From Octopus sinensis (Eukaryota): a DNA stretch of 64,000 nucleotides. A program made the position numbers and the translations under genes. Shown here in pieces: positions 1 to 62,714 of this stretch. The stretch covers positions 54,312,001 through 54,376,000 of the forward strand of contig NC_043005.1 in the NCBI RefSeq assembly GCF_006345805.1, written 5' to 3'. The notes under the pieces were generated by a model. That model was given only the letters and a program-made list of their open reading frames with translations. It was not told the DNA's origin and did no database searches. Every line of letters begins with the position of its first letter. Within the stretch, counting starts at the first letter, position 1.

Positions 1-156
1 CATATACACACCCAGACAGTGATTAAAAGATTAAGCTTGTTATGAATTCATTTTCCCATCAAGATATCTCAAATTAGTAAGTTCTTGACAATTCTAGACA
101 ATAACGATGCTTTCCACTGTGCTTTTAATGAACGCAACATAACATTACTGATACAG

Positions 157-165
157 ATAATAATA

Positions 166-224
<59 letters not shown>

Positions 225-322
225 GGTGGTGGTGGCGGCGGCGGCGACGACGGCGACGACGATAGTAGTAGTAGTAATAATAATGAGGATGATGACGACG
301 ACGATGATGATGATGATTATAA

Positions 323-1321: not shown

Positions 1322-1780
1322 CTGTGTAGTGAAGAAACTCACTTTGTACCCATGTAGTTTTGGGTTCAATCCTACTGTGCAGCACCTTGAGCAAGTATCT
1401 CCACTATAGCCTTGTGAATGAATTTGGAAACTGAATGGAAGCCCATCATATATATAGAACAGAAACACATTATATATAGTTATACGCATCCAACCCATGC
1501 CAGTATGGAAAACATGTTTAATGATGATGATGATGATGATTAGGAGGAGGAGGAGGATAAATGTGTGTGTGTGTGAGACTCTACCTCAGGGTATGACATC
1601 CAGTATTGGTTTGTTTAAATCCTAGTAACTGAGCAGTTCAGCAAAAGAGAACCAACAGAATAAGTAACTGATTTGAGAAAAGTACTGAGGTCAATTTGTT
1701 TGATGAATAACCCTCAAAGACATTGCACCAGTATGGCCACAGTCCAAAAACCGAAAAAAATGAAAGATATATATTTTGTC
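1322..1780 (+). mobile_element. Degraded family A SINE (5' part 1322-1455, 3' part ~1580-1780) with an intervening (ATG)n-tailed SINE 3' end
   Basis: gggttcaatcctactgtgcagcaccttgagcaagtatctcc; later agcagttcagcaaaagagaaccaacagaataag and ccagtatggccacagtcc. 1490-1540 (ccaacccatgccagtatggaaa + (ATG)n) matches the reverse complement of the left end of 43862-44100. Confidence 0.7.
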
Positions 1781-9658: not shown

Positions 9659-9968
9659 TTAATCTTCGTCTTCATCAACATCAATATCATAGTTGTCATC
9701 ATTTGTCATCACCATGATTCTTTGGTGATTCATCCCAACAGCACAATCCTGGAATTATCAGAATGTAGATCACCTAGCTGTCAAGATTTCGTCCAGTTTG
9801 ATTCTTGTTTACTTATCCATCATCATCACCATCGTCCATGTTGCTGTTGTCATCATCATCATCATCGTCATCATCATCATCATCATCATCGTTGTCGTCA
9901 TCATCTTTATCATCTTATTTTGATTTGTTTCATGCTGGTGGACTTTTTTCACAAAAGCACACACATAA

Positions 9969-15822: not shown

Positions 15823-16395
15823 AATTTCAAGGAGAAAAACATTTTCGAGGGTTTTTTTTTATATATTTTAAATTTACAACAAGCCATGTATCTACCAACT
15901 AGTCATTTTATTCAGTCCCTTATATTATAGTCAAATAACATTAGAAAAAAATATATATAAAAAAAAAATAAATAAACATAAATGAATAACTGAATGAATA
16001 AATAAAAGGGAAAGTTTGTTTGATGTTTGAATTATATTCTTCAGCAGTGAAGTCTTGTATGAATTTATCTGAACTTAAGGACCTGCTTGTTTTGATGTCC
16101 ACTAAGGTCACAGATTGAAAAATAAAATTAGAAATGAAGACACTGTTTCAAAGACTCTGAAATTGACTCGTCTCTCCAGAAATATGGAACTCCCATCTAA
16201 AAGCATATCAGATATATAAATTATTATTATTACTATTATTGTTGTTGTTGTTGTTATTATTATTATTATTATTATTGTTGTTGTTGTTGTTGTTGTCATG
16301 GTTGTTATTATTATTATTATTGCTTATTATTTATATATCCATATATAAATATATATATATATATACACATATATATGTGTATATATATGTGTATG

Positions 16396-18210: not shown

Positions 18211-18282
18211 GGCAGTTTAGCTTAATGGTAAAGCACTTGACGTTTAATCACAGGGATGTGAGTATGAGTCTCATGGCTGGCC
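18211..18282 (+). pseudogene. tRNA-Lys(TTT)-like pseudogene or isolated SINE head
   Basis: Cloverleaf can be drawn: acceptor ggcagtt/ggctggc (6/7 pairs incl. G-U), D stem gctt/aagc, anticodon loop cgtttaa (TTT, but G at position 33), T stem gtgag/ctcat. The anticodon stem and T loop (tatgagt) are degraded. Confidence 0.55.
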
Positions 18283-23874: not shown

Positions 23875-24281
23875 GGCGGCAGAAACGTTAGCACGCCGGG
23901 CAAATTGCTTAGCGGTATTTCGTCTGCCATTACATTCTGAGTTCAAATTCCGCCGAGATCGACTTTGCCTTTCATCCTTTTGGGGTCGAAAAAATAAAGT
24001 ACCAGTTACGCACTGGGGTCGATGTAATCGACTTAATCCGTTTGTCTGTCCTTGTTTGTCCACTCTATGTTTAGCCCCTTGTGGGTAATAAAGAAATAGG
24101 TATTTCGTCTGCCATTACATTCTGAGTTCAAATTCCGCCTAGATCGACTTAGCCTTTCATCCTTTCGGGGTCGAAAAAATAAAGTACCAGTTACGCACTG
24201 GGGTCGATGTAATCGACTTAATCCGTTTGTCTGTCCTTGTTTGTCCCCTCTATGTTTAGCTCCTTGTGGGCAATAAAGAAA
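23875..24281 (+). mobile_element. Family B SINE dimer (head plus two 185-bp units) with 10-bp TSD
   Basis: Units start at gtatttcgtctg (23915, 24100). Flanks tatatattta at 23865-23874 and 24282-24291. Confidence 0.92.
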
Positions 24282-25734
24282 TATATATTTACTTTACTAC
24301 AGCTTGTTATTAGACACATTTGGTAATCTGCCAAATAAATACAACAGTGAAATGCTGTTTGTACACATTTTTACATTCTTTGTATCTTGAACATTAAACT
24401 TAGTCAGTATGTTTGACATTAAGTTTGCACAACTATTAGCGTTCTTCTTCTATTTTACAGGGTTCTCATGAGCAGATTTATGCATAAGAATAACAACACG
24501 GTATTTGGAAACTGTTTTATTATTCTTTCACATACAACACTCGAGCTGCTTTGCCACTGTCTGTCATCATTAGTATTCTACTATCTGATAATGAGCAAAT
24601 GTTAATAAGATTAGGTGAAAGCTTACGAGAAGACTATAGCAAGACAATCTTTTTATCTAATTAAACCACCATATTTACTGAACACCAAAACTCAAATCAA
24701 ATATAATAAATCCCACAAAAAGCTCTTTCACCTTTTATCAGCTCAGTTAAGCAGCAAATTAAATATAGCAACATCAGTCTTTATATTAATGTGCAGTAAA
24801 GTTCTTGTTGCTTTGACTTGATAAGACTATGAAATCCTCTATTTTAATAAAAAAAACAATAATTTGGTTTAAAAAATGCATACCATGGGTCGGTATCTTG
24901 AATGCATATCAGCAAGGGAGCTAAACATTGCCAAAAAAAGAAAATGGAAAAAAAAAAAACTCATACCTTTCCAAACAACATTCTTTGCCATATTTATTTC
25001 TCACTGAATTACAATTACTCCCTTGTTGTTCACAATACTGTCAAAAATGCATTGTACCTGTGATTAGTCCACTGGAGATCCATAACCAACGTCACCATTG
25101 TTTACCATAAACTGTAGTGGCCCAGGATTAGAAGTTTGTCAGAAAAACAATATTTTTTATCATATGGAAAATAGAAGGATTCAGCTTAATCATAAGGTAG
25201 ATATTGAAATCCAGTGAGATAGAGGATTTTCCTCTCTAAGTCAGGTGGAAGACATATTTTATTTCCTTATTCAAATTATTTATTTCTTTACAGTTTAATA
25301 TTTTGGTTGACTGAGACAATTTGGCAATGGTTCACATATGATTGTTTACCAAAAGAAGGAAATTTTAGAAATTATTATTGTTGTTGTTGCTGCTGATGTT
25401 CTTCTTGCTTTGTTTTTGCTTTGGTTTATTTTTAATACATATGCAGGTCAAAAATACAGGCAAGCTAATGCAAATACCTGATATATAATTTCAGTGTTTA
25501 CTTACATGAGGCGCATAACCACATGCAGACACACACACACATGCACACACACTAGAAGATATATCTACACTAGAAAACAGATCATACACAATAAATATAT
25601 ACAACATACAATTCAGATATATAGCATATATGACATATATATAACTCAAAGACATACAATACAAACGCACGCATATATTTTGACATGTATATGTATGCAT
25701 AAACATACATATATACAGACATGGATACACACAG

Positions 25735-38535: not shown

Positions 38536-39170
38536 TTGGAATTTGCATCACCAGTCTGGAACCCCTATCCTACTCAGGATACTGACCTCCATGAAACTGT
38601 TCAGAGGCGTGCAACCAAACGAATATCTTCCATCAGGCATCTACCATACTCTGAACTTGTTTCCCTTGTCATAGATACATTAAAGCTCCAACATCTGGCA
38701 ACTGACTTAGTAAACATTCATAAAACTATTAACCATAACACCAACAACCACCTTGAACATCTTTTTTGAGCTCCATGTGTCTAATACACGTGGGCATGTC
38801 TACAAAGTCATAAAACAGCACAGCTCCTATGACTTTCAGAAGCATTTTTTCACACTTAGAGTTGCTGAATCATGGAAGAAACGACTTGCATCAGTTGTTA
38901 GTTTCCAAGACATTGCATCCTTTAAAACCTCCATGCTTCCTGAAATTTGCCCACACTACACCTGATATCCCACCCCTCCATACGCATGCACACATGTATA
39001 TTGTGACTCATACACTGTTCACTTTCCTGACTTTTGTATGTAATTCTATGTACTGTACATGCACTTTTGATGAGTTGTAGTGCACCTGAGCACTATACAC
39101 AATAATTTCATTATTATCATTATCGTTATTATTATTATTATTGTTGTTGTTGTTGTTATTATTATTATTG
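38536..39170 (+). mobile_element. CR1/L2-group LINE 3' end with (ATT)n tail
   Basis: LEFASPVWNPY..QDTDL.ETVQRRATK.I.SIRHLPYSE.L.SL..DTLKL, SNTRGH.YKV.KQHS..DF.KHFF.LRV.E.W. A 3' UTR runs to ~39108, then an (ATT)/(GTT) tail. Confidence 0.9.
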
Positions 39171-40549: not shown

Positions 40550-41860
40550 ATGCTGGAAGACCTATTAGCTTCTATAATACAGTTGCAAAAGCAATAACAA
40601 GAACAGCAACAGAAGTTGCAGAAACAACTACTTCAGCAACAAAGTTAATGTCTTAAGAAGTCCGGAAACACTATGAGTTCGTTTTCGCCAGGCGGCATAT
40701 CAAACTCTATAACAGAATTCAGTTTTGACCCAGAGGAGGGTATAACATTTGTAGCATACTTTAGACGAGATGAAGACATCTTCAAGGAATATTGCAAGTC
40801 GTGGATAGACAACAGAAAAGTAAGACTATTATTACATAAATTAGCGCTGAGCATGAAAAATACTGTAATTTCATACTATCCCAAAAAACTAGTAAAATTT
40901 GTTTCCAGGAAAAGGTCAAACTACTATCAAAACTATTCGGTGATAAGTAGACGAGGAATGTTCGAAGCTTCTAACAGTGAATAATCACAGGAGACTATAC
41001 AAATATAATAGATTGCCATTTGGTCAGAAGGTCGCACCTGCAATATTTCAACAGGTCATTGATGCGATTTTGGCAGACTGTCCATTTGCAATTCTGTACC
41101 TCGATGAAGTATTAATTAAAAGTGAATCTCGTGATCACCTTATCGAACATGTGAAATGTCTTTTTCAAAAAATAAGAGACTACGGTTTCACATTCAGTGA
41201 GGAGAAATGTGAATTCATTTTGCCTAAAATTAAATGCTTAGGATAAATTATAGATAAAAATGGAAGACGACCTGACCCGTCGAGGGCAGACGCAATTAAA
41301 AGTAGGTAGGTGCAGTCAACCTACCTCGAAGGCAACAATAAATTTCCTGCACAAACTTTTTACTTGATACGGTGTTCCAGACACCATAGTATTGAACAAT
41401 GGAGCAATGTAAAGATACGAGTTCAAGAAATTCTGCAAAATTAATGCAATTAAGCACGTATTTACCACACCCAACCACCTGAGGTCAAATGGGCAGGTAG
41501 AACGATTCTTAGATACCTTCAAGCGAGCACTAAGAAAAATCAAGGAACGAGCTAAGAAATGACGAAGCGCTAACTAAATTCTTAAGGGTGTACGGAATTA
41601 TGCTGAATCCGAATACCAGTTCAGACAAGTCGCCTGCAGAGCTAATGTTCGCTCGAAAGATTAAATCGATCTTCGACAAATTGTTGCCAAAGGAAAAGCA
41701 TATAGAGAAAATTTTAAAAATCCAACTAAACATTTTGAAATCGGAGACAAAGAACATTTCAAAGTATACAAGAACGGCAAAGAGAGTTGACAGAATGGTG
41801 TAGTGACTAAAAGAATTAGAAACATGATGTATTTAATAAAAGGCCAACGAATATACATGA
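40550..41860 (+). mobile_element. Gypsy internal region, multiply deleted: gag N-terminus, RT core piece, integrase piece
   Basis: gag: MLEDLL..Q-rich..ISNSITEFSFDPEEGITFVAYFRRDEDIF..KVRLLLHKL. RT: YKYNRLPFG.KVAPAIFQQ.ID..YLDE..KCEF. IN: GVPDTIV.NNG..EFKKFCK.N.IKHV.T.P.H.RSNGQVERF.DTFKRAL, KSPAELMF.RKI. No 3' LTR seen. Confidence 0.93.
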
Positions 41861-42366: not shown

Positions 42367-42510
42367 CAGATAGATAGATCGATAGATAGATAGGTAGGTA
42401 GGTAGGTAGGTAGGTAGGTAGGTACAAAGGTAGGTACGTAGGTAAGTAGATACTCAGGTAGATAGATAGATAGATAGATAGACAAACAGATAGGTAGGTA
42501 GGTAGGTAGG

Positions 42511-42606
<96 letters not shown>

Positions 42607-42657
42607 CAAACAGATAGGTAGGTAGGTAGGTAGGTAGGTAGGTAGATTGATAGATAG
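42367..42657. repeat. Compound (TAGA)n/(TAGG)n tetranucleotide array
   Basis: Alternating tracts, with a repeated gacaaacagataggtagg junction at ~42481 and ~42605. Confidence 0.95.
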
Positions 42658-42985: not shown

Positions 42986-43109
42986 CTTTTCTAAAGTTTC
43001 CTAAGACATAGAAACTGGAAATGGATATTGGGTATATTGGGCTTTGTATATATGTATTTGTACCCCAGTGTCACTTTGATGACATGCACTACTCTCTCAC
43101 TCAATATTG

Positions 43110-43148
<39 letters not shown>

Positions 43149-43187
43149 TAATAATAATAATAATAATAATAATGATGATAATAATAA

Positions 43188-43686
43188 TCTTGGTATAAAA
43201 GATGGGCTAAGTCTTGGTATAAAAGATGGGCTACAACAAATATTCTGCTCAATACCACAGATTTGCTTGTCAGTTGTTTGACCTTAACCAGTTGAGCATG
43301 TCCCTTAGTGGCTGACGATATGTGCATCTCTGATCACGAGCAGAAGTAGTGGGGGGGCATCATAGCCATGTGTTGAGAGGGATTCTTTGGGGTTTGAATA
43401 ATTCACCTCTGGAAATATGGGCGGTTCTTTCAACATCCTTAAACAACCCTTATTCAGGGACCTTTTGAGCGGGATGGGCTGCTCAACCTGAAGAAAATTC
43501 TAACTGGGCCCCACCTGCAAGGTCATGTGCTGTTTATATTGATATGAGATCACCATGTCGCGCACATATGGTTGTGATGCATGTGCCTGGTGTACCCTTA
43601 TCAGATGGGTAGTCATGATGGGTATACTGGGCTTTGTATATTTTACCCCAGTGTCACTTTGATGGCATGAACTGCTCTCTCACTCA
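43188..43686. mobile_element. ~500-bp interspersed repeat embedded in (AAT)n; a second 75-bp copy of its right end lies at 43027-43102
   Basis: gggtatactgggctttgtata..taccccagtgtcactttgat(g/a)gcat..tctctcactcaata occurs at both 43027-43102 and ~43620-43690, each followed by (AAT)n. A 22-bp direct duplication marks the left end. Confidence 0.75.
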
Positions 43687-43820
43687 ATAATAATAATAAT
43701 AATAATATAATAATAATAATAATAATAATAAGGTTCTCTTATTATTTTACCGTCCCTAATCATAGTTCTTATGACCCCTATCAGCATGGTTGCTGTTATC
43801 ATTGTTGTTATTGTTATTAT

Positions 43821-44215
43821 CAAGGTGGCAAGCTAGCAGAATTGACAGCACACCAGGTAAAATCATCATCATCATCATCAATCATCGGTTAACGTCCGCT
43901 TTCCATGCTAGCATGGGTTGGACGATTTGACTGAGGACTGGCGAACCAGATGGCTGCACCAGGCTCCAAACTGATCTGGCAGAGTTTCTACTGCTGGAAG
44001 CCCTTCCTAACGCCAACCACTCCGAGCGTGTAGTGGGTGCTTTTACGTGCCACCTGCACAGGAGCCAGTCCAACGTCACTGGCAACGACTTCGCTCGAAT
44101 ACAAGTGGTATTTCGTCTGCCGCAGCGCTCTGAGTTTCAATTCCCCCAAGCTTAACTTTGCCTTTCATCCTTTCAGAGTTGATAAATTAAGTATCAATGA
44201 AACACTGGGGTTGAT
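43821..44215. mobile_element. Family B SINE (+) interrupted by an (ATG)n-tailed, RTE-tail-like SINE (-, 43862-44100)
   Basis: Head ggtggcaagctagcagaattgacagcacaccaggtaaaat stops at 43861 and resumes with gtggtatttcgtctgccgc at ~44105. The insert is (CAT)n-cggttaacgtccgctttccatgctagcatgggttggacg..cccttcctaacgccaacc. Confidence 0.85.
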
Positions 44216-44227
44216 GTTCCTCCTCCT

Positions 44228-46215
44228 CACATCATCATCATCGTTGTCATCATCATCGTCGTTGTCATCATAATCATTGTCATCATCATCATCATCATTA
44301 TCATCGTTGTTGTTATCGTCATTATCATCGTTGTCATCATCATCATTATCATCGTTGTCATCATCATCATTATCATCGTCGTTGTCATCATCATCATTAT
44401 CATCGTTGTTGTCATCATCATTATCATCGTTGTCGTCATCATCATTATCATCGTTGTCATCATCATCATATCATCGTTGTTGTCATCTTCATTATCATCG
44501 TTGTCATCATCATCATTATCATCGTTGTCATCATAATCATTATCATCGTTGTCGTCATCATTATCATCGTCATCACCATCATTATCATCGTTGTTGTCAT
44601 CATCATTATCATCGTTGTTGTCATCATCATTATCATCGTTGTCGTCATCATCGTTATCATCGTTGTCATCGTCATCATTATCATCGTTGTTGTCATCATC
44701 ATTATCATCGTTGTTGTCATCATCATTATTATCGTTGTCGTCATCATCATCATCGTTGTCATCATCATCATTATCATCGTTGTCATCATCATCATTATCA
44801 TCGTTGTTGTCATCATCATTATCATCGTTGTTGTCATCATCATTATTATCGTTGTCGTCATCAACATCATCGTTGTCATCATCATCATTATCATCGTTGT
44901 CATCATCATCATTATCATCGTTGTCGTCATCATTATCAACGTCATCACCATCATTATCATCGTTGTTGTCATCATCATTATCATCGTTGTTTTCATCATC
45001 ATTATCATCGTTGTCATCATCATCATATCATCGTTGTTGTCATCATTATCATCGTTGTTGTCATCATCATTATCATCGTTGTTGTCATCATCATTATCAT
45101 CGTTGTCGTCATCATCGTTATCATCGTTGTCATCATCATCATTATCATCGTCGTTGTTGTCATCATTATCATCGTTGTTGTCATCATCATTATTATCGTT
45201 GTCGTCATCATCATCATCGTTGTCATCATCATCATTATCATCGTTGTCATCATCATCATTATCATCGTTGTCGTCATCATTATCAACGTCATCACCATCA
45301 TTATCATCGTTGTTGTCATCATCATTATCATCGTTGTTGTCATCATCATTATCATCGTTGTCGTCATCATCGTTATCATCGTTGTCATCATCATCATTAT
45401 CATCGTTGTTGTCATCATCATTATCATCGTTGTTGTCATCATCATTATTATCGTTGTCGTCATCATCATCATCGTTGTCATCATCATCATTATCATCGTT
45501 GTCATCATCATCATTATCATCGTTGTTGTCATCATCATTATCATCGTTGTTGTCATCATCATTATTATCGTTGTCGTCATCATCCTCATCGTTGTCATCA
45601 TCATCATTATCATCGTTGTCATCATCATCATTATCATCGTTGTCGTCATCATTATCAACGTCATCACCATCATTATCATCGTTGTTGTCATCATCATTAT
45701 CATCGTTGTTTTCATCATCATTATCATCGTTGTCATCATCATCATATCATCGTTGTTGTCATCATTATCATCGTTGTTGTCATCATCATTATCATCGTTG
45801 TTGTCATCATCATTATCATCGTTGTCGTCATCATCGTTATCATCGTTGTCATCATCATCATTATCATCGTCGTTGTCATCATCATTATCATCGTTGTTGT
45901 CATCATCATTATTATCGTTGTCGTCATCATCATCATCGTTGTCATCATCATCATTATCATCGTTGTCATCATCATCATTATCATCGTTGTCGTCATCATT
46001 ATCAACGTCATCACCATCATTATCATCGTTGTTGTCATCATCATTATCATCGTTGTTTTCATCATCATTATCATCGTTGTCATCATCATCATATCATCGT
46101 TGTTGTCATCATTATCATCATTGTTGTCATCATCATTATCATCGTTGTCATCATCATCATTATCATCGTTGTCATCATCCTCATTATCATCGTTGTCATC
46201 ATCATCATCATCATC
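44228..46215. repeat. (ATC)-derived complex minisatellite with a 372/347-bp alternating, 719-bp higher-order repeat
   Basis: The marker (c)a(a/t)cgtcatcacc recurs at 44568, 44940, 45287, 45659 and 46006 (spacings 372, 347, 372, 347). gttttc recurs at 44990, 45709 and 46056. A 1-nt deletion (catatc) recurs at 44470, 45027, 45746 and 46093. Confidence 0.95.
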
Positions 46216-47074
46216 ACCAACACTACTGTCATCATCACTATCCCCTTCTTTGTTGTTGTCTTTAAGCCTCATCACCATCCGAAACCTCTACCAGCACAAC
46301 CACCACTGCAAACACCACGACCACCACCGCTGCTATCATTGTTGTCATTATTGTCATTGACATCATCTCAATTCCCATCACCACTATCCTCGTGCATGTT
46401 GGTGGCATTGTCATCATCATTCTCGTCATCGCCACCAACTACCATAAACACAATTACTACCACCACCACCACCACCACTACCACCACCATCGCAATCACC
46501 TTCACCATCCTCATCATCTTCGTCGTTGTCGTCACTGTAATAACCTCTCTTTGAAAGCAAAATAAATAAATAAATATATATATAAATAAATAGGCAGAGA
46601 AATAAAACCAAGTAAACAGAATGCTTTCATCACCACATGATATTTTGCAGAAAAAAGATTATATATTCGTAATGAAGATATATAACAGTTATCATGCTAA
46701 TAAATTCCACTCTACCTACACTTTCTGAAAACCATTGCTCATTCATACAATCGCACCATATTATCTGCAACTATATAATTTGATATGATTTCAGTGTTAT
46801 ATATATATATTACATGCACCAAAGTAAACTTTAGTGCATGTAATATATATGAACTCTTGTATTGTATAGGAAAATAATATGATGTCATAGGGAATCTGTT
46901 ATTGAAATAAATACTTTCAGTTGTTGTGCTACCATCTTTTGGCCGTAGAATACATAAGAATACATATGGTTTAAAACCGAAATAAATGGGAATCATTTGA
47001 ATGGCAATATATAAATACATATGCACACACACACATAAATATACATACACACATATATATATATATAAATATAC

Positions 47075-47244: not shown

Positions 47245-48275
47245 TATGTATATATGTATGTATGTATATTTACATACATATACATGCATATATTGCATGA
47301 CATACATACATATGTAGGCCTATACATACACACATCAATAATTTTACACTATATATATAATGTAATACACACTTTTGTCTTCCTACCTCTACTACCCCCA
47401 CCAATGCCAGATCACCACCTCCTCCTCTTCCTCCTCCTCCTCCTCCTCGTCATCATTCCCCCCTCTGCAAAAAAAAATGTCTTATTCTATACAATAATTG
47501 ACAATAATGCTGGTAACTCATTTCTGTAGATAGAAATTTCACGACGACGACGACAACAACGACGATACAGAAGAGAAAATTCCTCTATTGTGTCTAGAAT
47601 ATGGAACTAGACATTTATTTACTTATTTATCTGTTTATTTATTTAATTATATATTTACTTACTATTATTGTTGTTGTTGTTAGCGTTGTTATCATGATAT
47701 TTATGGTATACATATTTTTGAACTATTAATATGCTATATAACTGCATTGTACGCTGCACATTTGCAATTGTATTGGAAGAGTATAGAGACATAGGTTATA
47801 AAAGAGTGCTATATGAATATAATCGTGTGTAATACAGAAACATGCTGATAAAAGTAACCATCAATTACACAGATTCTGTCTTCTTTCTCTCTTTATCACT
47901 CCCTCTCTTTCTGTTACTCTCTTTTTAACTCTCATTCTTTTTCTCTTCTCTTCTCTTTCTACTCTGATATTTGGATTTATTCAGCTCTGCTCTGTTTTGA
48001 TATCAGTTTTATCATATTATACGTATTTTATGTTATGTTTTTATAGAGTTTATGATTAAATATTTATATATGTATGTCTGCTTATATATATAGAGACATA
48101 TGTATACACATACACACATATATATATACACACATAAACACACAGAACACACACACTCACACACACGTACATACATATCAAGGCATTTATATACATATGT
48201 ATACACATATGCATATATGTATGAATGTATACATGCATGAATTTATATTTACAAGATGTAAAACTATATACATGT

Positions 48276-48417: not shown

Positions 48418-49235
48418 TCACTCATATACATAAATATATACATATACACATATATTTTTATATATGTATATATATGTATATGTACTTATATATATATAAA
48501 TACACATATATACATGGTCACATGAATATAATAAATGTCTTTGAATATGAGCTTTAGTTATTTACATGTGCCCTATTACAAATATACCATAACATAACTG
48601 CCAACTTATTCAGTTTTTTTTTCTCATATTACTCTGTAGGTGGAAAAATATGGATTTTGATGGCATATAGCTATACAAACATGCACGCACATGTACACAT
48701 GTATTGGGCATAAAAGCATACATATATAGATGTACGCATGCACATATATGGATGTGTGTGTGTGTGTATGTATGTATGTGGTGTATGTATACATGTATGT
48801 AGGTATGTATGTGTATGCTGCTCTACTGTCAAGCTAAATAAAATAGAAGAGAACATAAATAATTTTAAAGAGAGTCAATTGTGAATGAGGAACAGATGAA
48901 CTTGTGATAGCACAAAGAAGAAAATGAAGAAGATGAAGAAGCAGTACAAGAACAAGAAGAAGAACAACAACAACAATAGTTACTTTATTTGCCACAAGGG
49001 CAACTAATATCAGAATAATTGAAGGACAAATTACAGAAAAAGAAGTAAGTTAAATAGCATAATATTAGGACATTGCATTAGAACTGAGTATAAGAAAAGA
49101 GGCTCTAAAAATATAAAAGTATATAAGGATATGTAATGAAATGTCCCAATGTGGGATCGGCCACAGTTCTGGTGAAAATAATAATAGTAATAATAATAAT
49201 AATAATGATAATAATAATGATAATAATAATAATAA

Positions 49236-49612
49236 TCCTTTCTACAATAGGCACAAGGCCTGAAATTTGTGAGGAGGGGGTAAGTCGATCATATCAGTGC
49301 CAGTAGTTGCCTGGTACTTAATTTATCGATCCCCCAAAATGATGAAAGACAAAGTCGACCTTGGCAGCATTTGAACTTAGGACATAACGACAGGTGAAAT
49401 ACTGCTTAGCATTTCATCTGGTGTGCTAGCAATTCTACTAGCTCACTGCCTTGATAATGATGATGATGATGATGATGATGATAGTGATGATGATGATGAT
49501 GTTTTGCAAGGTGCTTGAAGCATGACCAGTAAACAAGTGTCATCTTAGTCTGCTGGCTATGGACAGCTGACATTTTCCATCATACCCAGCAAAATAAGCT
49601 GAGAGTTTTCAT

Positions 49613-52097: not shown

Positions 52098-53540
52098 CTA
52101 TTTTTTGCAAGTCTTTGAGAAACATACCCATGCTTGGTCTTGTTTTTTATATGCTAAGCATTTCACATCCGGGTTTTCTTTGGGGTGTGTTAATCTAGCT
52201 GTTTTGGGGTTGTATGGGAGTTCATCAGGAAGAGAGAGCTTTCTGAGAAGCTCACTACCAACAAATAGGATATCGTTCACTTCAGTTAACAGCAGTAAAT
52301 TAATGTATTCATTTTAACTGCTGGTTGAGAGAGACTATATGGCATTAAAAGGCTGCTTGCACTTATCTCTAGCTTGTACCTCCTTTATCTTTCTTAGGTA
52401 GAGCCTGACGATATCATTATTTTTGTAGAAGTTTCCAGTCGATGTTAGTATCATGTGGATTTTAACATCTCTGGTGTGGATTTCTCCTACAGACCAGTCA
52501 AGAATCCCAAATTTTGGCCTCAGCACTGGTACTGCCATATTTTTCTAATTTTGACATAATATTCTTGGGTCACCCTATCTGTATTCACAATTCTTTCACA
52601 TTATATGTTTTCATCAACTTTTGGTACTTATAGAATTTTTTTGTGTGGGACAGGAGAGATAGTGAGCCCATTGATGCACAGGTTTTGGGTCTGGGAGACT
52701 AGTTATCTGCATTCAACAATCAAATATGTATGTTTCTTTTGACCAAATTCCATCCCTATATCAGTTGAAAATATTATTAATCCCAGTTAGGGTTTTTTCC
52801 CTATTTTGGCGTTGTTAACATTTTTAGATTAAACCTTAAAGGTCATCCACAAAGAAATTATGGTTTACATTGATATCTCTAGCAGTTGCAGACCCTAACA
52901 TGTAACCATTTGACTTTTGTTGCAGGAATGACAACGGATTTAATGCCAAAATGAACAGAATGACAGAAAGACTATCTCCTTGGAATATTTCCTTTGCAAT
53001 ATTTATGACTTTGGAAACGATCGTCCCACTCTCAGTTTTGAGTGTTAGAATTGTTATCTGAGTCATTGTGAGCCTCTCAATGGCAGTAATTAAAGTAACA
53101 GGCACTTTTGCCAAATGTAGACATATCAGCAGCCATGAGTGGGAAACAATCAAAAGCCTTACTATAATCAGGCCCTACTGTTGACATAGACGTTGATACA
53201 CGAGCATACTTCATGGCTGGTACACTAATTATTGCGATTCCAACAGTTCTATGACAAATTTTCACTTCAGACAGTACAGCTTTGTTTATCAAAAGTTGTT
53301 CAACACATACACACACTTTCGACTTCATAATGGCTTACTGATCATCACTGTGTTGCCTGACTCACAATGATCATGGAGGAATTGGCTGAGGCAGCTTGTG
53401 TACAGTTTGTACATAATGTTTTGGCAAGCAAAGGGCCTACAATTACCTGCCAACTTAGTGGTTTCATTCTTGGCTACAAGATCGACTAGACTGCTAAATT
53501 GCAGGAATGTAAACAAACCATCACCAGTTGCCAAATGGTA
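52098..53540 (-). mobile_element. R4/Dong-like non-LTR retrotransposon RT and thumb region, decayed
   Basis: GNCRPFACQNIMYKLYTSCL, INKAVL.EV, DYSKAFD, SHSWL, EIFQGDSLS.ILFILALNPLSFL, NHNFFVDDL, AVPVL.P.FGILDW..EI..DVK..ILT.TG...NDI.RLYL. Confidence 0.92.
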
Positions 53541-53585
53541 GTAGGGGGAAATACAAAGATAAATGTACGTACACACACACACACA

Positions 53586-54489
53586 TACAAAATGCATTAA
53601 AAAAGTATCCGACTTCATTTTTTTCCACCCAAATTTATGCAGCCTGGGCAAAATCCTTTGGATGGGAGGTAACGCTACCCTTCCTGCAATTGCTTGAAAA
53701 TTTTCACGCCAGTAAGCCAAGTCAGTTCTGACTGTTACTCCTGGAGTATAGACATGTAGAGTGAGCTCATTGGATTTTCGTTTGCCTGCAAGATGACTGA
53801 GTACATTCTTCAGAGACTATAAACCCAGTCCTATCACAAGCAATGATGGTTTTCATGAAGTCTGAGTCGTGATTTGCACAGTCTACCATGTCCTGCACAA
53901 TTTCCATACAGATTTGCTTCTGCTTCTCTGCCAGCACCTTGGAGACGAATTTCACCAACACTTTCTGCTTGCTCAAATTTTCTGTTAAAATGGATTGCAT
54001 TGGTTATCTGCTTATTCCCACTTTGTGAGCCATTTCATGGATTTTTACATGACGGTTTTCTATGATTATTTGCAGAACTTTCTTTATTGGCTTCTTATTT
54101 CGACTTGTGAATCGCCTACCTCACTCTCCACTGAGATGTAGTCATGTTTGGAGCCGTCGTACTCCTCCTTGATCTGAGTTCTGCATATGACATCATTTCC
54201 AAAGGCCTGCTGAAGGATGGTAACAGCCCAAGTATCACCAAGTTTTTTGACAAATACCGATGCAAATCTCTGCTTGATACGTTCAGTAAAAACGAAAATC
54301 TGACCAGTGCAATCTGCATGTGTGTACTCTATGCATAACAGCCAGAGATTGACCCAGCCTACCAGCACAAAATTATTCATGCATGCACTGGAACGGTGGC
54401 ATCACCACCCACCCAATGGGCTTTGCCCACATGACATTAGTTTTGGCAAGAAAAGAATGAAGTCAGACACTATTTTAATGCACTTCATA
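53586..54489 (-). mobile_element. Internally deleted mariner transposon, ~38-bp TIRs, TA-flanked
   Basis: Left tacaaaatgcattaaaaaagtatccgacttcattttttt vs reverse complement of right, tatgaagtgcattaaaatagtgtctgacttcattcttttt. Coding remnants: QR..FVKKLGDT..ILQQAFGNDV.CRTQIKE.Y and SILTENL...V.VKFV.KVL..KQKQ..MEI.QDM..DFMKTII..D.T. The C-terminal catalytic half is missing. Confidence 0.92.
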
Positions 54490-60710: not shown

Positions 60711-61687
60711 AAAGAAATAAGTCTTGTATTAATTTTAATGAAAGCACAAAATAACTAGAATTTAATTTCTCAAATCTGAACATGATAGAAATCTTCTAAA
60801 CACAGATTTGAAATCAGCATGCCAAATTATCAACAAACACCATCCTGTTTACCTGTAACAGAACTTTCGTTGCCTTGTGTTATCTTCGAGCACACAGTGA
60901 AAGCTGCAACACAAATTATTGCATTGACACGAAAACAAGAAAATATCTATGTACATTTCCCGCTACATTTCTATAACGTGTATTATATCTAATTGACTTG
61001 CTGATGTACATTTTTCACACAGAAATGTTTGTAAACTATATCTTGATTGTTGTAAATTAATATTTTAACTTCTCCATGTCTAGATTCTGTTCCATTTCAA
61101 CCTGCCTTCTTAAACCATATTAGTGCGTAATCATTATTGTATTATTTTACCACCAAGATTCGCCATGTTCATTTTTCTGCAGACTTGTATGAAAGTATAT
61201 AGTGCGTGGTTCACTTTCACTTTCGTTTACATGCACACAGATGCATATTTCATGCACAGCAGTGCATGGCCGGAATATGTGCCATCTGGGGGCAGTCCTT
61301 GAGTTTTCCACACGTGACTCCTTACAGAATCTTACACAACCGACTCAAAAATGCCGCTTCCAATTCCCCCACCCCACTCTATCTACGCTGTTGTATAATT
61401 CAGCTGATACATCAATCCAAAATGCAAAAGATAAAACGAGGGACACGTAATTATCTGAAAGGCCTTTCTTTAAAAGATTTTTTAAATTAAAAATTCAACT
61501 TCCTTTCAATTTTGAGGAGACCCCCTTTCCAACACTCACCCCACACACATCGAGAACCCTAATACAGTATTATTATGTCTTGCCAAATTTCTACTAGAGG
61601 CTCTACTTGCTGGTTCATTTGTATACATGCAAACCAGCTCCACGTCCGTTTGTAACTGGGCAAGCCTATATAATATTTTTGCGTCGG

Positions 61688-62350
61688 AGGGCGGCGAGCT
61701 GGCAGAAACGTTAGCGCCCCGGGCGAAATACTTAGCGATATTTCGTCTGCTGTTACGTTCTGAGTTCAAATTCCGCCAAGGTCAACTTTGCCTTTCATCC
61801 TTTCGGGGTCGATAAATTAAGTACCAGTTACGCACTGGAGTCGATGTAATCGACTTAATCCGTTTGTCTGTCCTTGTTTGCCCCCTCTGTGTTTAGCCCC
61901 TTGTGGGTAGTAAAAAAATAGGTATTTCGTCTGAAGGCGGCGAGCTGACAGAAACGTTAGCACGCCGGGTAAAATGCTTAGCGGTATTTTGTCTGTCTTT
62001 ACGTTCTGAGTTCAAATTCCGCCGAGGTCGACTTTGCTTTTCATCCTATCGGGGTCGATTAAATAAGTACCAGTTACGCACTGGGGTCGATATAATCGAC
62101 TTAATCCGTTTGTCTGTCCTTGTTTGTCCTCTCTGTGTTTAGCCCCTTGTGGGTAGTAAAGAAATAGGTATTTCGTCTGTCGTTACGTTCTGAGTTCAAA
62201 TTCCGCCGAGGTCGACTTTGCCTTTCATCTTTTCGTGGTTGATAAATAAAGTACCAGTTTCACACTGGGGTCGATGTAATCGACTTAATCTCTTTGTCTG
62301 TCCGTGTTTGTCCCCTCTATGTTTAGCCCCTTGTCGGTAGTAAAGAAATA
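61688..62350 (+). mobile_element. Young family B SINE trimer within one 16-bp TSD
   Basis: aatatttttgcgtcgg at 61672-61687 and 62351-62366. Unit 1 (head) 61688-61921, 12-nt stub gtatttcgtctg, unit 2 (head) 61934-62167, unit 3 (headless) 62168-62350. CpGs are largely intact. Confidence 0.96.
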
Positions 62351-62714
62351 AATATTTTTGCGTCGGTTCCTAAGCCGACTTGCCATATTAATCTTTTACT
62401 GCTTTTGATAATTTTATATCTTCGGTAGGATTTCGGTACATGTTGTTTAATATTGATCTTTATCAACTGCTACTTTTCTACCAGTCTAGAAAAGAGCTAA
62501 TACTATAAATCTCATGCTGGGGACATTGTAGTTTTACCAGGGTCACATGAGTTAGTTTGGCTTATTAGAACTTTTAAACATGCAGACTACCTGATTTCAT
62601 TGTTGGCGCGTGTTAATGTTTCTCTTTTTCTTTTCTTTTTTCTCTTTTTTGCCAATCAGAAACTAGTCGTCAGTTGAACTTTTTTTTTCTTTTTTTGGAC
62701 GCTATTATGCTGGT

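What the first reader, a model, noticed from the sequence alone, without database searches (positions are those of the whole stretch)
44228..46215. Four-level hierarchical repeat: ATC triplet, 21-24-bp monomer, 372/347-bp blocks, 719-bp higher-order unit
Seen: three independent markers give the same periodicity (44568/44940/45287/45659/46006; 44990/45709/46056; 45027/45746/46093). The array is two 719-bp dimers plus a partial 347-type block. On the minus strand one frame reads almost pure Asp/Asn (DDDNDDN..), like acidic mollusc matrix proteins. However, the same 1-nt deletion is copied four times (347 = 3x116-1), which breaks that frame each time. Inference: a satellite-like higher-order repeat evolving from a microsatellite by successive unequal crossovers; coding is unlikely but not excluded.
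Basis: partly seen in the sequence, partly recalled or inferred. Interest (0 to 1): 0.7.

Follow-up and report, generated by a model that had tools for sequence, protein, structure and literature searches.

The report
Nested non-coding ATC-derived repeat array in octopus
This is a real but ordinary 2-kb stretch of non-coding repeat DNA in an octopus-type genome, in which an ATC triplet repeat has been copied in larger and larger blocks; its look of an acidic protein follows from the base pattern alone.

Summary
Window 44228-46215 is one tandem array. 96.5% of its in-phase triplets are ATC, ATT, GTC or GTT (pattern RTY). Shuffling the monomer order never exceeds 86% identity at long range.

One 23-nt monomer carrying a 1-nt deletion occurs four times, always in a matching position, so the deletion arose once and was copied.

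The Asp/Asn reading on the minus strand is not evidence of a gene. The reverse complement of RTY is RAY, which gives only Asp and Asn codons. For the same reason all three plus-strand frames lack stop codons. The Asp/Asn frame is broken four times. No homologue or protein family was found, no DNA fold, and no host exon in the window.

Transposon content places the window in an Octopus-type genome. Mixed RTY triplet runs are common there, and a dispersed element always starts with (ATC)n.

Verdict: a young, locus-specific minisatellite with higher-order structure, built by slippage and unequal exchange. It is a new member of a known kind and of low interest. Copy number needs checking against reads.

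The parts
43862..44112 (+). Dispersed octopus element that begins with (ATC)8 (43862-43886), followed by GTTAACGTCCGCTTTCCATGCTAGCATGGGTTGGAC... It is context for the array and a possible source of ATC seeds.
   Evidence: Copies at 82-93% identity occur in Octopus sinensis (L001) and O. bimaculoides (L002). All 12 of those copies start with (ATC)n.
44113..44216 (+). Truncated fragment of the abundant tRNA-like SINE. It ends at ...CACTGGGGTTGATG, directly against the array.
   Evidence: It is 76-82% identical to full SINE copies at 61739, 39798 and 23911.
44217..44230 (+). TTCCTCCTCCTCAC leader, forming a compound (TCC)n-(ATC)n start of the array.
   Evidence: The same (TCC)n(ATC)n arrangement precedes the element copy at 1489-1560 on the minus strand.
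44228..44567 (+). Older, more diverged left part of the array (monomers A-L). It includes the oldest copy of the 23-nt monomer I at 44452-44474.
   Evidence: Only 62-78% identical to interior blocks at lags 347 and 1066.
44568..44939 (+). Alpha block 1, 372 nt: M G G N(OP) G Q R E E G Q S E E T.
   Evidence: Three differences from alpha block 2.
44685..44918 (+). Two tandem 117-nt five-monomer sub-units (GQREE, GQSEE) inside alpha 1. The same pair lies at 45404-45637 in alpha 2.
   Evidence: The lag-117 match is 97.7-98.3% identical.
44940..45286 (+). Beta block 1, 347 nt: M G U I V G G N W X Q R E E T. It equals alpha plus the 92-nt GUIV insert minus one 117-nt unit.
   Evidence: Two differences from beta block 2.
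45287..45658 (+). Alpha block 2, 372 nt.
45659..46005 (+). Beta block 2, 347 nt.
46006..46215 (+). Partial third beta block (M G U I a E b c), diverging towards the right edge of the array.
   Evidence: Seven differences in 210 nt against beta 1 and beta 2.
44469..44470 (+). Site of the 1-nt deletion (CATCATTATC becomes CATCATATC), first copy. The other three copies are at 45026-45027, 45745-45746 and 46092-46093.
   Evidence: The deleted form occurs 4 times and the intact form 53 times. The deleted form always sits in the same position of the higher-order unit.
46216..46540 (+). Cryptically simple right flank rich in ATC, ACC, GTC and GTT. Probably old, decayed repeat.

Best explanation
The locus is a young, non-coding minisatellite with higher-order repeat structure. 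It lies in a transposon-rich region of an Octopus-type genome with no recognisable host exon.

Proposed history:
1. An (ATC)n or compound (TCC)n(ATC)n microsatellite, of a kind very common in this genome, acquired transitions at triplet positions 1 and 3, giving GTC, ATT and GTT.
2. An eight-triplet version (ATC ATT ATC ATC GTT GTT GTC ATC) was then amplified as a 24-nt monomer, with 21-nt variants that lack one triplet.
3. Out-of-register exchange or slippage between diverged monomers copied ever larger pieces: a 117-nt five-monomer unit, a 372-nt block, a 347-nt variant block (92-nt insert, one 117-nt unit lost), and finally the 719-nt pair of blocks.
4. A single 1-nt deletion in one monomer was carried along by these duplications.

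Shown here: the nested structure, its statistical significance, the retained RTY phase, the inherited deletion and the absence of any coding signal.
Inferred: the order of events, the molecular mechanism (unequal crossing-over versus slippage or gene conversion), the lack of function, and an age on the order of 1 million years or less.
For: - Structure.
- Significance: observed long-range identity 0.993 against a shuffle maximum of 0.86.
- Microsatellite origin: 641 of 664 in-phase triplets are ATC (347), GTT (115), GTC (103) or ATT (76), and only four phase shifts occur.
- Genome habit: 17 other RTY triplet runs of at least 8 units lie in the window, against 0 in shuffles. They include mixed ATC/GTC/GTT runs at 9846-9905 and 288-317.
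- Seed source: a dispersed element starts with (ATC)n in 12 of 12 copies in two Octopus genomes and in 2 of 2 copies in the window.
- Edge effect: the interior is 99.3% identical, while the left part (62-78%) and the right part (96.7%) are more diverged. This is the pattern expected for arrays homogenised by unequal exchange.
- Differences between copies are mostly G/A changes at CpG, or TG-versus-CA doublets, as expected for neutral CpG decay.
- Non-coding: four -1 frame breaks; no homologue; no Pfam or PDB match; only retrotransposon domains in the window; no DNA fold on either strand (z = +1.3 and +1.7).
- Literature: short repeats giving longer units by cycles of duplication and divergence, and higher-order repeats as co-amplified adjacent monomers, are reviewed in PMC5615363.
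- Age: 5 differences in 719 nt, using the octopus calibration of Jukes-Cantor distance 0.065 for about 18 million years (PMC13282606), gives about 1 million years. This is rough.
Against: - No reads, population data or orthologous locus could be examined, so the copy number and the exact block order rest on a single assembly.
- Only 2.2 copies of the top-level unit exist, so 'higher-order repeat' rests on the minimum number of units.
- Lack of function is inferred from absence of signals, not shown.
- The array has a CpG observed/expected ratio of 2.09, against 0.49 for the window. Young age explains this, but it would also fit an unmethylated, possibly regulatory, region.
- The link to a transposon (ATC)n tail is circumstantial, because no element body abuts the array.
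Confidence: 0.8

Rival explanations
1. The array is an exon on the minus strand encoding an Asp/Asn-rich acidic protein, like mollusc shell-matrix proteins.
For: One minus-strand frame reads almost pure D/N for up to 240 codons. An ATG-initiated ORF at 46278-45742 enters the array.
Against: - RAY triplets can only encode Asp or Asn, so the composition is automatic.
- Four -1 shifts move the frame to Met/Thr/Ile and then to a frame dense with stop codons.
- The N-terminus of that ORF (MVMRLKDNNKEGDSDDD...) has no hydrophobic leader.
- No homologue at E<=1e-3 among 8000 candidates, and no Pfam or PDB match.
- No exon-like ORF in the surroundings.
- The host appears to be an octopus, which has no mineralised external shell (general knowledge).
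Confidence: 0.02
2. The fine structure is an assembly artefact: a collapsed, expanded or mis-joined array, or indels introduced by long-read errors.
For: Units that are 99.3% identical with a 719-nt period are hard to assemble. Reads could not be examined here.
Against: - The deletion occurs in 4 of 57 otherwise identical contexts and always in the same slot (U-I-V), plus one older copy in a diverged context (H-I-J). Random or systematic read errors would not produce this.
- Copies carry private substitutions, and divergence increases gradually towards the edges. That is typical of real arrays.
Confidence: 0.1
3. The array is an internal minisatellite of a mobile element, so it would be dispersed with that element rather than formed at this locus.
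For: It is bounded on the left by transposon fragments (43862-44216). Elements in this genome carry (ATC)n ends.
Against: - No second copy of the 24-nt monomer array exists in the window; only two loose matches occur, at 9842 and 9890.
- About 41 kb of O. sinensis and O. bimaculoides sequence holds only short (ATC)n-type hits.
- No terminal repeats or element body are seen on the right side.
Confidence: 0.07
4. The array is a functional regulatory cluster, for example about 66 evenly spaced TGATAA (GATA-type) motifs, or an unmethylated CpG-rich island.
For: TGATAA occurs at 33 per kb in the array against 1.3 per kb elsewhere. CpG observed/expected is 2.09 against 0.49.
Against: - Both features follow directly from amplifying one 24-nt motif that contains ATT-ATC and ATC-GTT junctions.
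- No gene was detected nearby.
- The young age explains why the CpGs survive.
Confidence: 0.04

Closest known systems
Higher-order repeat (HOR) tandem arrays, e.g. primate alpha satellite (PMC5615363, PMC4131833)
   Same: Several diverged adjacent monomers are amplified together. Units are therefore far more alike (99.3%) than neighbouring monomers (about 85%). The array edges are more diverged than the interior.
   Different: The monomer is 24 nt rather than about 170 nt. The array is 2 kb with only 2.2 top-level units, not megabases. It is a single interstitial locus with no evidence of centromeric or heterochromatic location.
Satellites and minisatellites built from short motifs by cycles of duplication and divergence (reviewed in PMC5615363; the classic case is mouse satellite, from general knowledge)
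   Same: A short ancestral motif is still readable inside every larger unit, and the periodicities are nested.
   Different: All levels are preserved within a single 2-kb locus. The ancestral motif is a triplet whose variants are all transitions (RTY).
Nested or multi-period tandem repeats (NTRFinder, PMC3273788)
   Same: It is a complex tandem structure that a single-period finder reports only at its lowest periods. TRF gives 24 and 45, even with the maximum period set to 2000.
   Different: A nested tandem repeat is defined as two or more distinct motifs interspersed. Here all monomers are variants of one motif.
Acidic Asp-rich mollusc shell-matrix proteins (Aspein/Asprich type; general knowledge)
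   Same: Only the amino-acid composition of one conceptual translation.
   Different: There is no continuous reading frame, no signal peptide, no homology and no gene context. The composition is forced by the DNA repeat.
Microsatellite ends of retroposons (SINE/LINE simple-repeat tails; general knowledge)
   Same: The genome's (ATC)n tracts are systematically attached to a dispersed element (14 of 14 copies examined). The array starts with the same (TCC)n(ATC)n arrangement.
   Different: The array is not attached to an element body, so its descent from such a tail is only a hypothesis.

Membership tests
Higher-order repeat tandem array | Head-to-tail monomers of a common motif | tested here: met
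   TRF gives period 24, 84.5 copies, 85% matches. Of 85 parsed monomers, 47 are 24 nt and 18 are 21 nt.
Higher-order repeat tandem array | Multi-monomer units repeat with much higher identity than adjacent monomers | tested here: met
   The 719-nt units are 99.3% identical, against about 85% between monomers. The maximum after shuffling monomer order is 0.86.
Higher-order repeat tandem array | Several complete copies of the top-level unit | tested here: inconclusive
   Only 2.2 copies are present (44496-46075), which is the minimum for calling a period.
Classical satellite DNA | Long arrays, high genomic abundance, heterochromatic or centromeric location | tested here: not met
   The array is 1,988 nt. 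No other copy lies in the 64-kb window or in 41 kb of other Octopus sequence. Genome-wide abundance and chromosomal position cannot be tested with these tools.
Microsatellite-derived (cryptically simple) minisatellite | The ancestral short-motif phase is retained throughout the larger units | tested here: met
   96.5% of in-phase triplets are ATC, ATT, GTC or GTT, with only four phase shifts.
Nested tandem repeat (PMC3273788) | [quoted passage not shown] | tested here: inconclusive
   Short runs of different monomers (EE, GG) do alternate, but they are variants of one motif rather than distinct motifs.
Acidic shell-matrix protein gene | Uninterrupted open reading frame through the Asp-rich domain | tested here: not met
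   Four -1 shifts occur. The D/N frame passes into an M/T/I frame and then into a frame full of stop codons.
Acidic shell-matrix protein gene | Sequence relatives or a recognisable domain or signal peptide | tested here: not met
   No hit at E<=1e-3. No Pfam or PDB match. The ORF start has no hydrophobic leader.
Acidic shell-matrix protein gene | Expression in mantle or secretory tissue | not testable with these tools
   No transcript or peptide data were available.
Retroposon simple-repeat tail | The repeat directly abuts the element body | tested here: not met
   The (ATC)8 at 43862-43886 abuts an element body, but the array itself does not. Its right flank has no match to the element.

The most novel reading that the evidence does not exclude
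The array may be a snapshot of satellite birth from a transposon-borne microsatellite. In that reading, the (TCC)n(ATC)n end of an abundant octopus element, diversified mainly by CpG-linked transitions, is the recurrent seed from which octopus genomes build minisatellites with higher-order structure. Such loci would then be numerous, polymorphic and traceable to element insertions.
Probability: 0.15. Interest if true: 0.4.

Novelty: new member of a known kind. Interest (0 to 1): 0.18.

Why it matters
Its main value is as a clean worked example and a warning.

All stages from triplet to 719-nt unit are preserved within 2 kb. That makes the locus a compact illustration of how tandem arrays gain higher-order structure.

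It also shows why repeats of the RTY/RAY type produce very long spurious ORFs. The plus-strand ORFs reach 506-662 codons with no stop in any frame. The minus strand gives an 'acidic protein'. Either could mislead gene predictors on cephalopod genomes.

In practice the locus is likely to vary in length between individuals and could serve as a marker. It does not open a new biological question.

Tried and rejected
- Exact look-ups of four window ORFs (45742-46278 minus, 44277-46265 plus, 40673-40984 plus, 53325-53720 minus) in the public gene-position index found nothing on record. No independent assembly of the locus could therefore be retrieved.
- A 31-nt two-monomer pattern has no exact match in the metagenome contigs.
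- The 240-aa D/N translation gave no homologue, no Pfam family and no PDB relative. Low-complexity correction makes the homologue search a weak negative.
- TRF run locally with a maximum period of 2000 still reports only periods 24 and 45. The 719-nt level had to be shown by autocorrelation and monomer coding.
- DNA folding of both strands is weaker than that of shuffled sequence, so a hairpin or structured-RNA reading was dropped.
- Rfam found nothing in or near the array.
- Pfam scanning of 97 non-low-complexity ORFs across the window found only RVT_1 and DUF7083, so no host gene context could be established.
- I looked for the body of the (ATC)n-bearing element on the right of the array and found none. 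The transposon-tail origin therefore stays a hypothesis.
- I considered whether T at triplet position 3 is enriched before G (51% against 20% before A) as evidence for CpG-driven diversification. I rejected it as a test because all copies descend from one monomer and are not independent.

Full report
**1. What is there**

Window 44228-46215 is a single tandem array. TRF reports period 24, 84.5 copies and 85% matches, with an alternative period of 45. Autocorrelation of the region peaks at lags 24 (0.82), 719 (0.77 over the whole region), 3 and 21.

Local profiles show 97-100% identity at lag 719 from about 44470 to 45340. They also show alternating stretches of high identity at lags 347 and 372.

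I cut the array at each CGT anchor and gave every distinct monomer a letter. The result is:

ABCDEEFGHIJEKL | MGGNOPGQREEGQSEET | MGUIVGGNWXQREET | MGGNWGQREEGQYEET | MGUIVGGNWZQREET | MGUIaEbc

- Monomer M starts at 44568, 44940, 45287, 45659 and 46006.
- The TTTT variant (monomer U) starts at 44985, 45704 and 46051.
- The 23-nt monomer I starts at 45009, 45728 and 46075, with a fourth copy at 44452.

**2. The levels of the hierarchy**

- **Triplet.** 641 of 664 in-phase triplets (96.5%) are ATC (347), GTT (115), GTC (103) or ATT (76). That is the pattern RTY: ATC plus transitions at positions 1 and 3.
- **Monomer.** 47 monomers are 24 nt and 18 are 21 nt.
- **117-nt unit.** The five-monomer unit GQREE is duplicated in tandem inside each 372-nt block at 97.7-98.3% identity.
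- **Blocks.** The alpha block is 372 nt and the beta block is 347 nt. Beta equals alpha plus the 92-nt insert GUIV after M, minus one 117-nt unit (372 + 92 - 117 = 347).
- **719-nt unit.** This is the alpha-beta pair. Unit 44568-45286 differs from unit 45287-46005 at 5 positions (99.3%). The lag-719 match spans 44496-46075, or 2.2 copies.

The third beta block is partial and more diverged, with 7 differences in 210 nt. The left 340 nt is older still, at 62-78% identity to the interior blocks.

**3. More than chance**

I shuffled the order of the actual monomers 200 times. The best 600-nt long-range identity averaged 0.777 (sd 0.024, maximum 0.86). The observed value is 0.993, at lag 719.

**4. 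The 1-nt deletion**

The form CATCATATCATCG occurs four times, and the intact form CATCATTATCATCG occurs 53 times. Three deleted copies sit in the identical slot U-I-V of the beta blocks. The fourth sits in a related but diverged context (H-I-J) in the old left part.

The phase tracker finds exactly four -1 shifts and no others. This is the signature of one mutation copied by later duplications. Neither random nor systematic sequencing error would produce it.

**5. Coding or not**

On the minus strand, RTY becomes RAY: GAT and GAC encode Asp, and AAT and AAC encode Asn. A D/N-only translation is therefore the automatic reading of this repeat and says nothing about selection. The other two minus-strand frames are equally predictable: Met/Thr/Ile, and a frame of stop/Gln/Arg.

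On the plus strand, none of the three frames can contain a stop codon. This produces spurious ORFs of 506-662 codons made of Ser/Leu, His/Cys/Tyr/Arg or Ile/Val.

The D/N frame is broken at each monomer I. After two breaks it reaches the frame full of stop codons.

Other tests were also negative:
- The 240-aa D/N segment has no homologue at E<=1e-3 among 8000 candidates. This is a weak negative because of composition correction.
- It has no Pfam family and no PDB relative.
- Neither DNA strand folds better than shuffled sequence (z = +1.7 and +1.3).
- Rfam finds nothing in or near the array.

**6. Surroundings and organism**

The window is AT-rich (G+C about 0.32) and full of (TA)n and other microsatellites and SINE copies.

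I scanned 97 non-low-complexity ORFs from the whole window against Pfam. The only hits were RVT_1 plus DUF7083 at about 40.65-41.25 kb and a weak RVT_1 near 52.9 kb. These are retrotransposon remnants, and no host exon was found.

The reverse-transcriptase fragment's best relatives are 'K02A2.6-like' proteins of Octopus sinensis and O. bimaculoides, at 65-68% identity.

I fetched the two loci that encode those proteins. They contain:
- the window's SINE at 89-91% identity;
- many copies, at 82-93% identity, of the element that lies just left of the array.

The window therefore comes from an Octopus-type genome. Published work puts repeats at about 66% of the O. vulgaris genome, with SINEs at 11.6% (PMC13282606).

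**7. Where the seed may come from**

The element at 43862-44112 begins with (ATC)8. All 12 copies in the two Octopus loci begin with (ATC)n of 2-10 units directly before GTTTAACGTCC...CCATGCTAGCATGGGTTGG. The second window copy (1489-1560, minus strand) is preceded by (TCC)5 and (ATC)7.

The array itself starts TTCCTCCTCCTCAC followed by ATC units.

Apart from the array, the window holds 17 RTY triplet runs of at least 8 units, against 0 in shuffles. Some already mix ATC, GTC and GTT, for example 9846-9905, 288-317 (minus strand) and 47543-47566 (minus strand).

The raw material is thus ubiquitous in this genome, and this locus is the one that grew. However, no element body abuts the array on its right. 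A direct origin from a transposon tail remains a hypothesis.

**8. Mechanism and age**

The following features match the accepted model:
- nested periodicities;
- a homogeneous interior with diverged edges;
- a variant block formed by gain and loss of whole monomer groups;
- co-amplification of a neutral frameshift.

In that model, short repeats give longer units through cycles of duplication and divergence, and higher-order repeats arise when adjacent monomers are amplified together by unequal exchange. Gene conversion and slippage are alternatives (review PMC5615363). Sequence alone cannot tell which process acted here.

The differences between copies are mostly G/A changes at CpG sites, or TG-versus-CA doublets. 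These are the two products of CpG deamination.

The array still has 109 CpGs, an observed/expected ratio of 2.09, in a window where the ratio is 0.49. This fits a recent origin.

Five differences in 719 nt, with the published octopus calibration of Jukes-Cantor distance 0.065 for about 18 million years, give roughly 1 million years or less for the last duplication. This estimate is rough and is an inference.

**9. Comparison with known kinds, and verdict**

The locus works like a higher-order repeat satellite. It meets the structural criteria, though only at the minimum of 2.2 top-level units. It fails the classical definition of satellite DNA on size and abundance, as far as those can be tested here. 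It is best described as a microsatellite-derived minisatellite with higher-order structure. It fails every testable criterion for an acidic matrix-protein gene.

The high density of TGATAA motifs (33 per kb) and of CpGs are by-products of amplifying one motif.

The finding is a new member of a well-known kind and of low interest.

The main open point is technical. Copy number and block order need confirmation from spanning reads, which I could not examine.

Noticed in passing
window 43862-44112 and 1489-1560 (minus strand); L001 and L002, 12 copies: A dispersed octopus element (GTTTAACGTCCGCTTTCCATGCTAGCATGGGTTGGACG...) always begins with an (ATC)n tract, sometimes preceded by (TCC)n. This held for all 14 copies examined. 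It looks like a genome-wide distributor of ATC microsatellites, and read in the opposite orientation the tract would be a (GAT)n 3' tail.
   Followed up: partly
window 23914-24290 and 61682-62357: Copies of the abundant tRNA-like SINE are arranged head to tail as partial tandems. One has a 185-nt period in two copies at 95% identity. The other has 246-nt and 184-nt periods across three units. These are SINE-derived tandem arrays.
   Followed up: no
window 156-209, 288-317, 9846-9905, 16235-16297, 39110-39169, 47543-47566, 49189-49236 and others: Seventeen RTY-type trinucleotide runs of at least 8 units lie outside the array, against none in shuffles. They are ATC, ATT, GTT, GTC and mixtures of these. 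Triplet repeats that interconvert by transitions are a habit of this genome.
   Followed up: partly
window 44228-46215: The array has a CpG observed/expected ratio of 2.09 (109 CpGs), in a window where the ratio is 0.49. It also has 66 TGATAA motifs on the minus strand at about 24-nt spacing. Both follow from the amplified motif, but a CpG-island or motif-cluster scan would flag this locus.
   Followed up: partly
window about 40650-41500 and about 52840-53170: Decayed retrotransposon remnants. The first has DUF7083, RVT_1 and an integrase-like tail. The second is a weaker reverse-transcriptase fragment. The closest named relatives are Octopus sinensis and O. bimaculoides 'K02A2.6-like' proteins at 65-68% identity.
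   Followed up: partly
window 18211-18282 (+): A tRNA-like sequence sits just at the Rfam threshold (29.2 bits against 29), and ARAGORN does not call it. It is probably a tRNA pseudogene or the head of a SINE.
   Followed up: partly
window 43030-43188 and 43620-43731: Two copies of a short element (GGGTATAYTGGGCTTTGTATAT...CAGTGTCACTTTGATG...CTCTCTCACTCAATA) lie about 590 nt apart. Each ends in an (AAT)n/(ATA)n tract. This is either a local duplication or two insertions of an element with a microsatellite tail.
   Followed up: no
window 42368-42657: A long (AGAT)n microsatellite: about 72 units at 87% matches. It gives a spurious 122-codon ORF of YLSI repeats.
   Followed up: no
window 46216-46540: The right flank of the array is a 325-nt cryptically simple tract, with ACC, ATC, GTC and GTT runs and (ACC)10 at 46459-46489. 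It may be the decayed older edge of the same repeat region.
   Followed up: no
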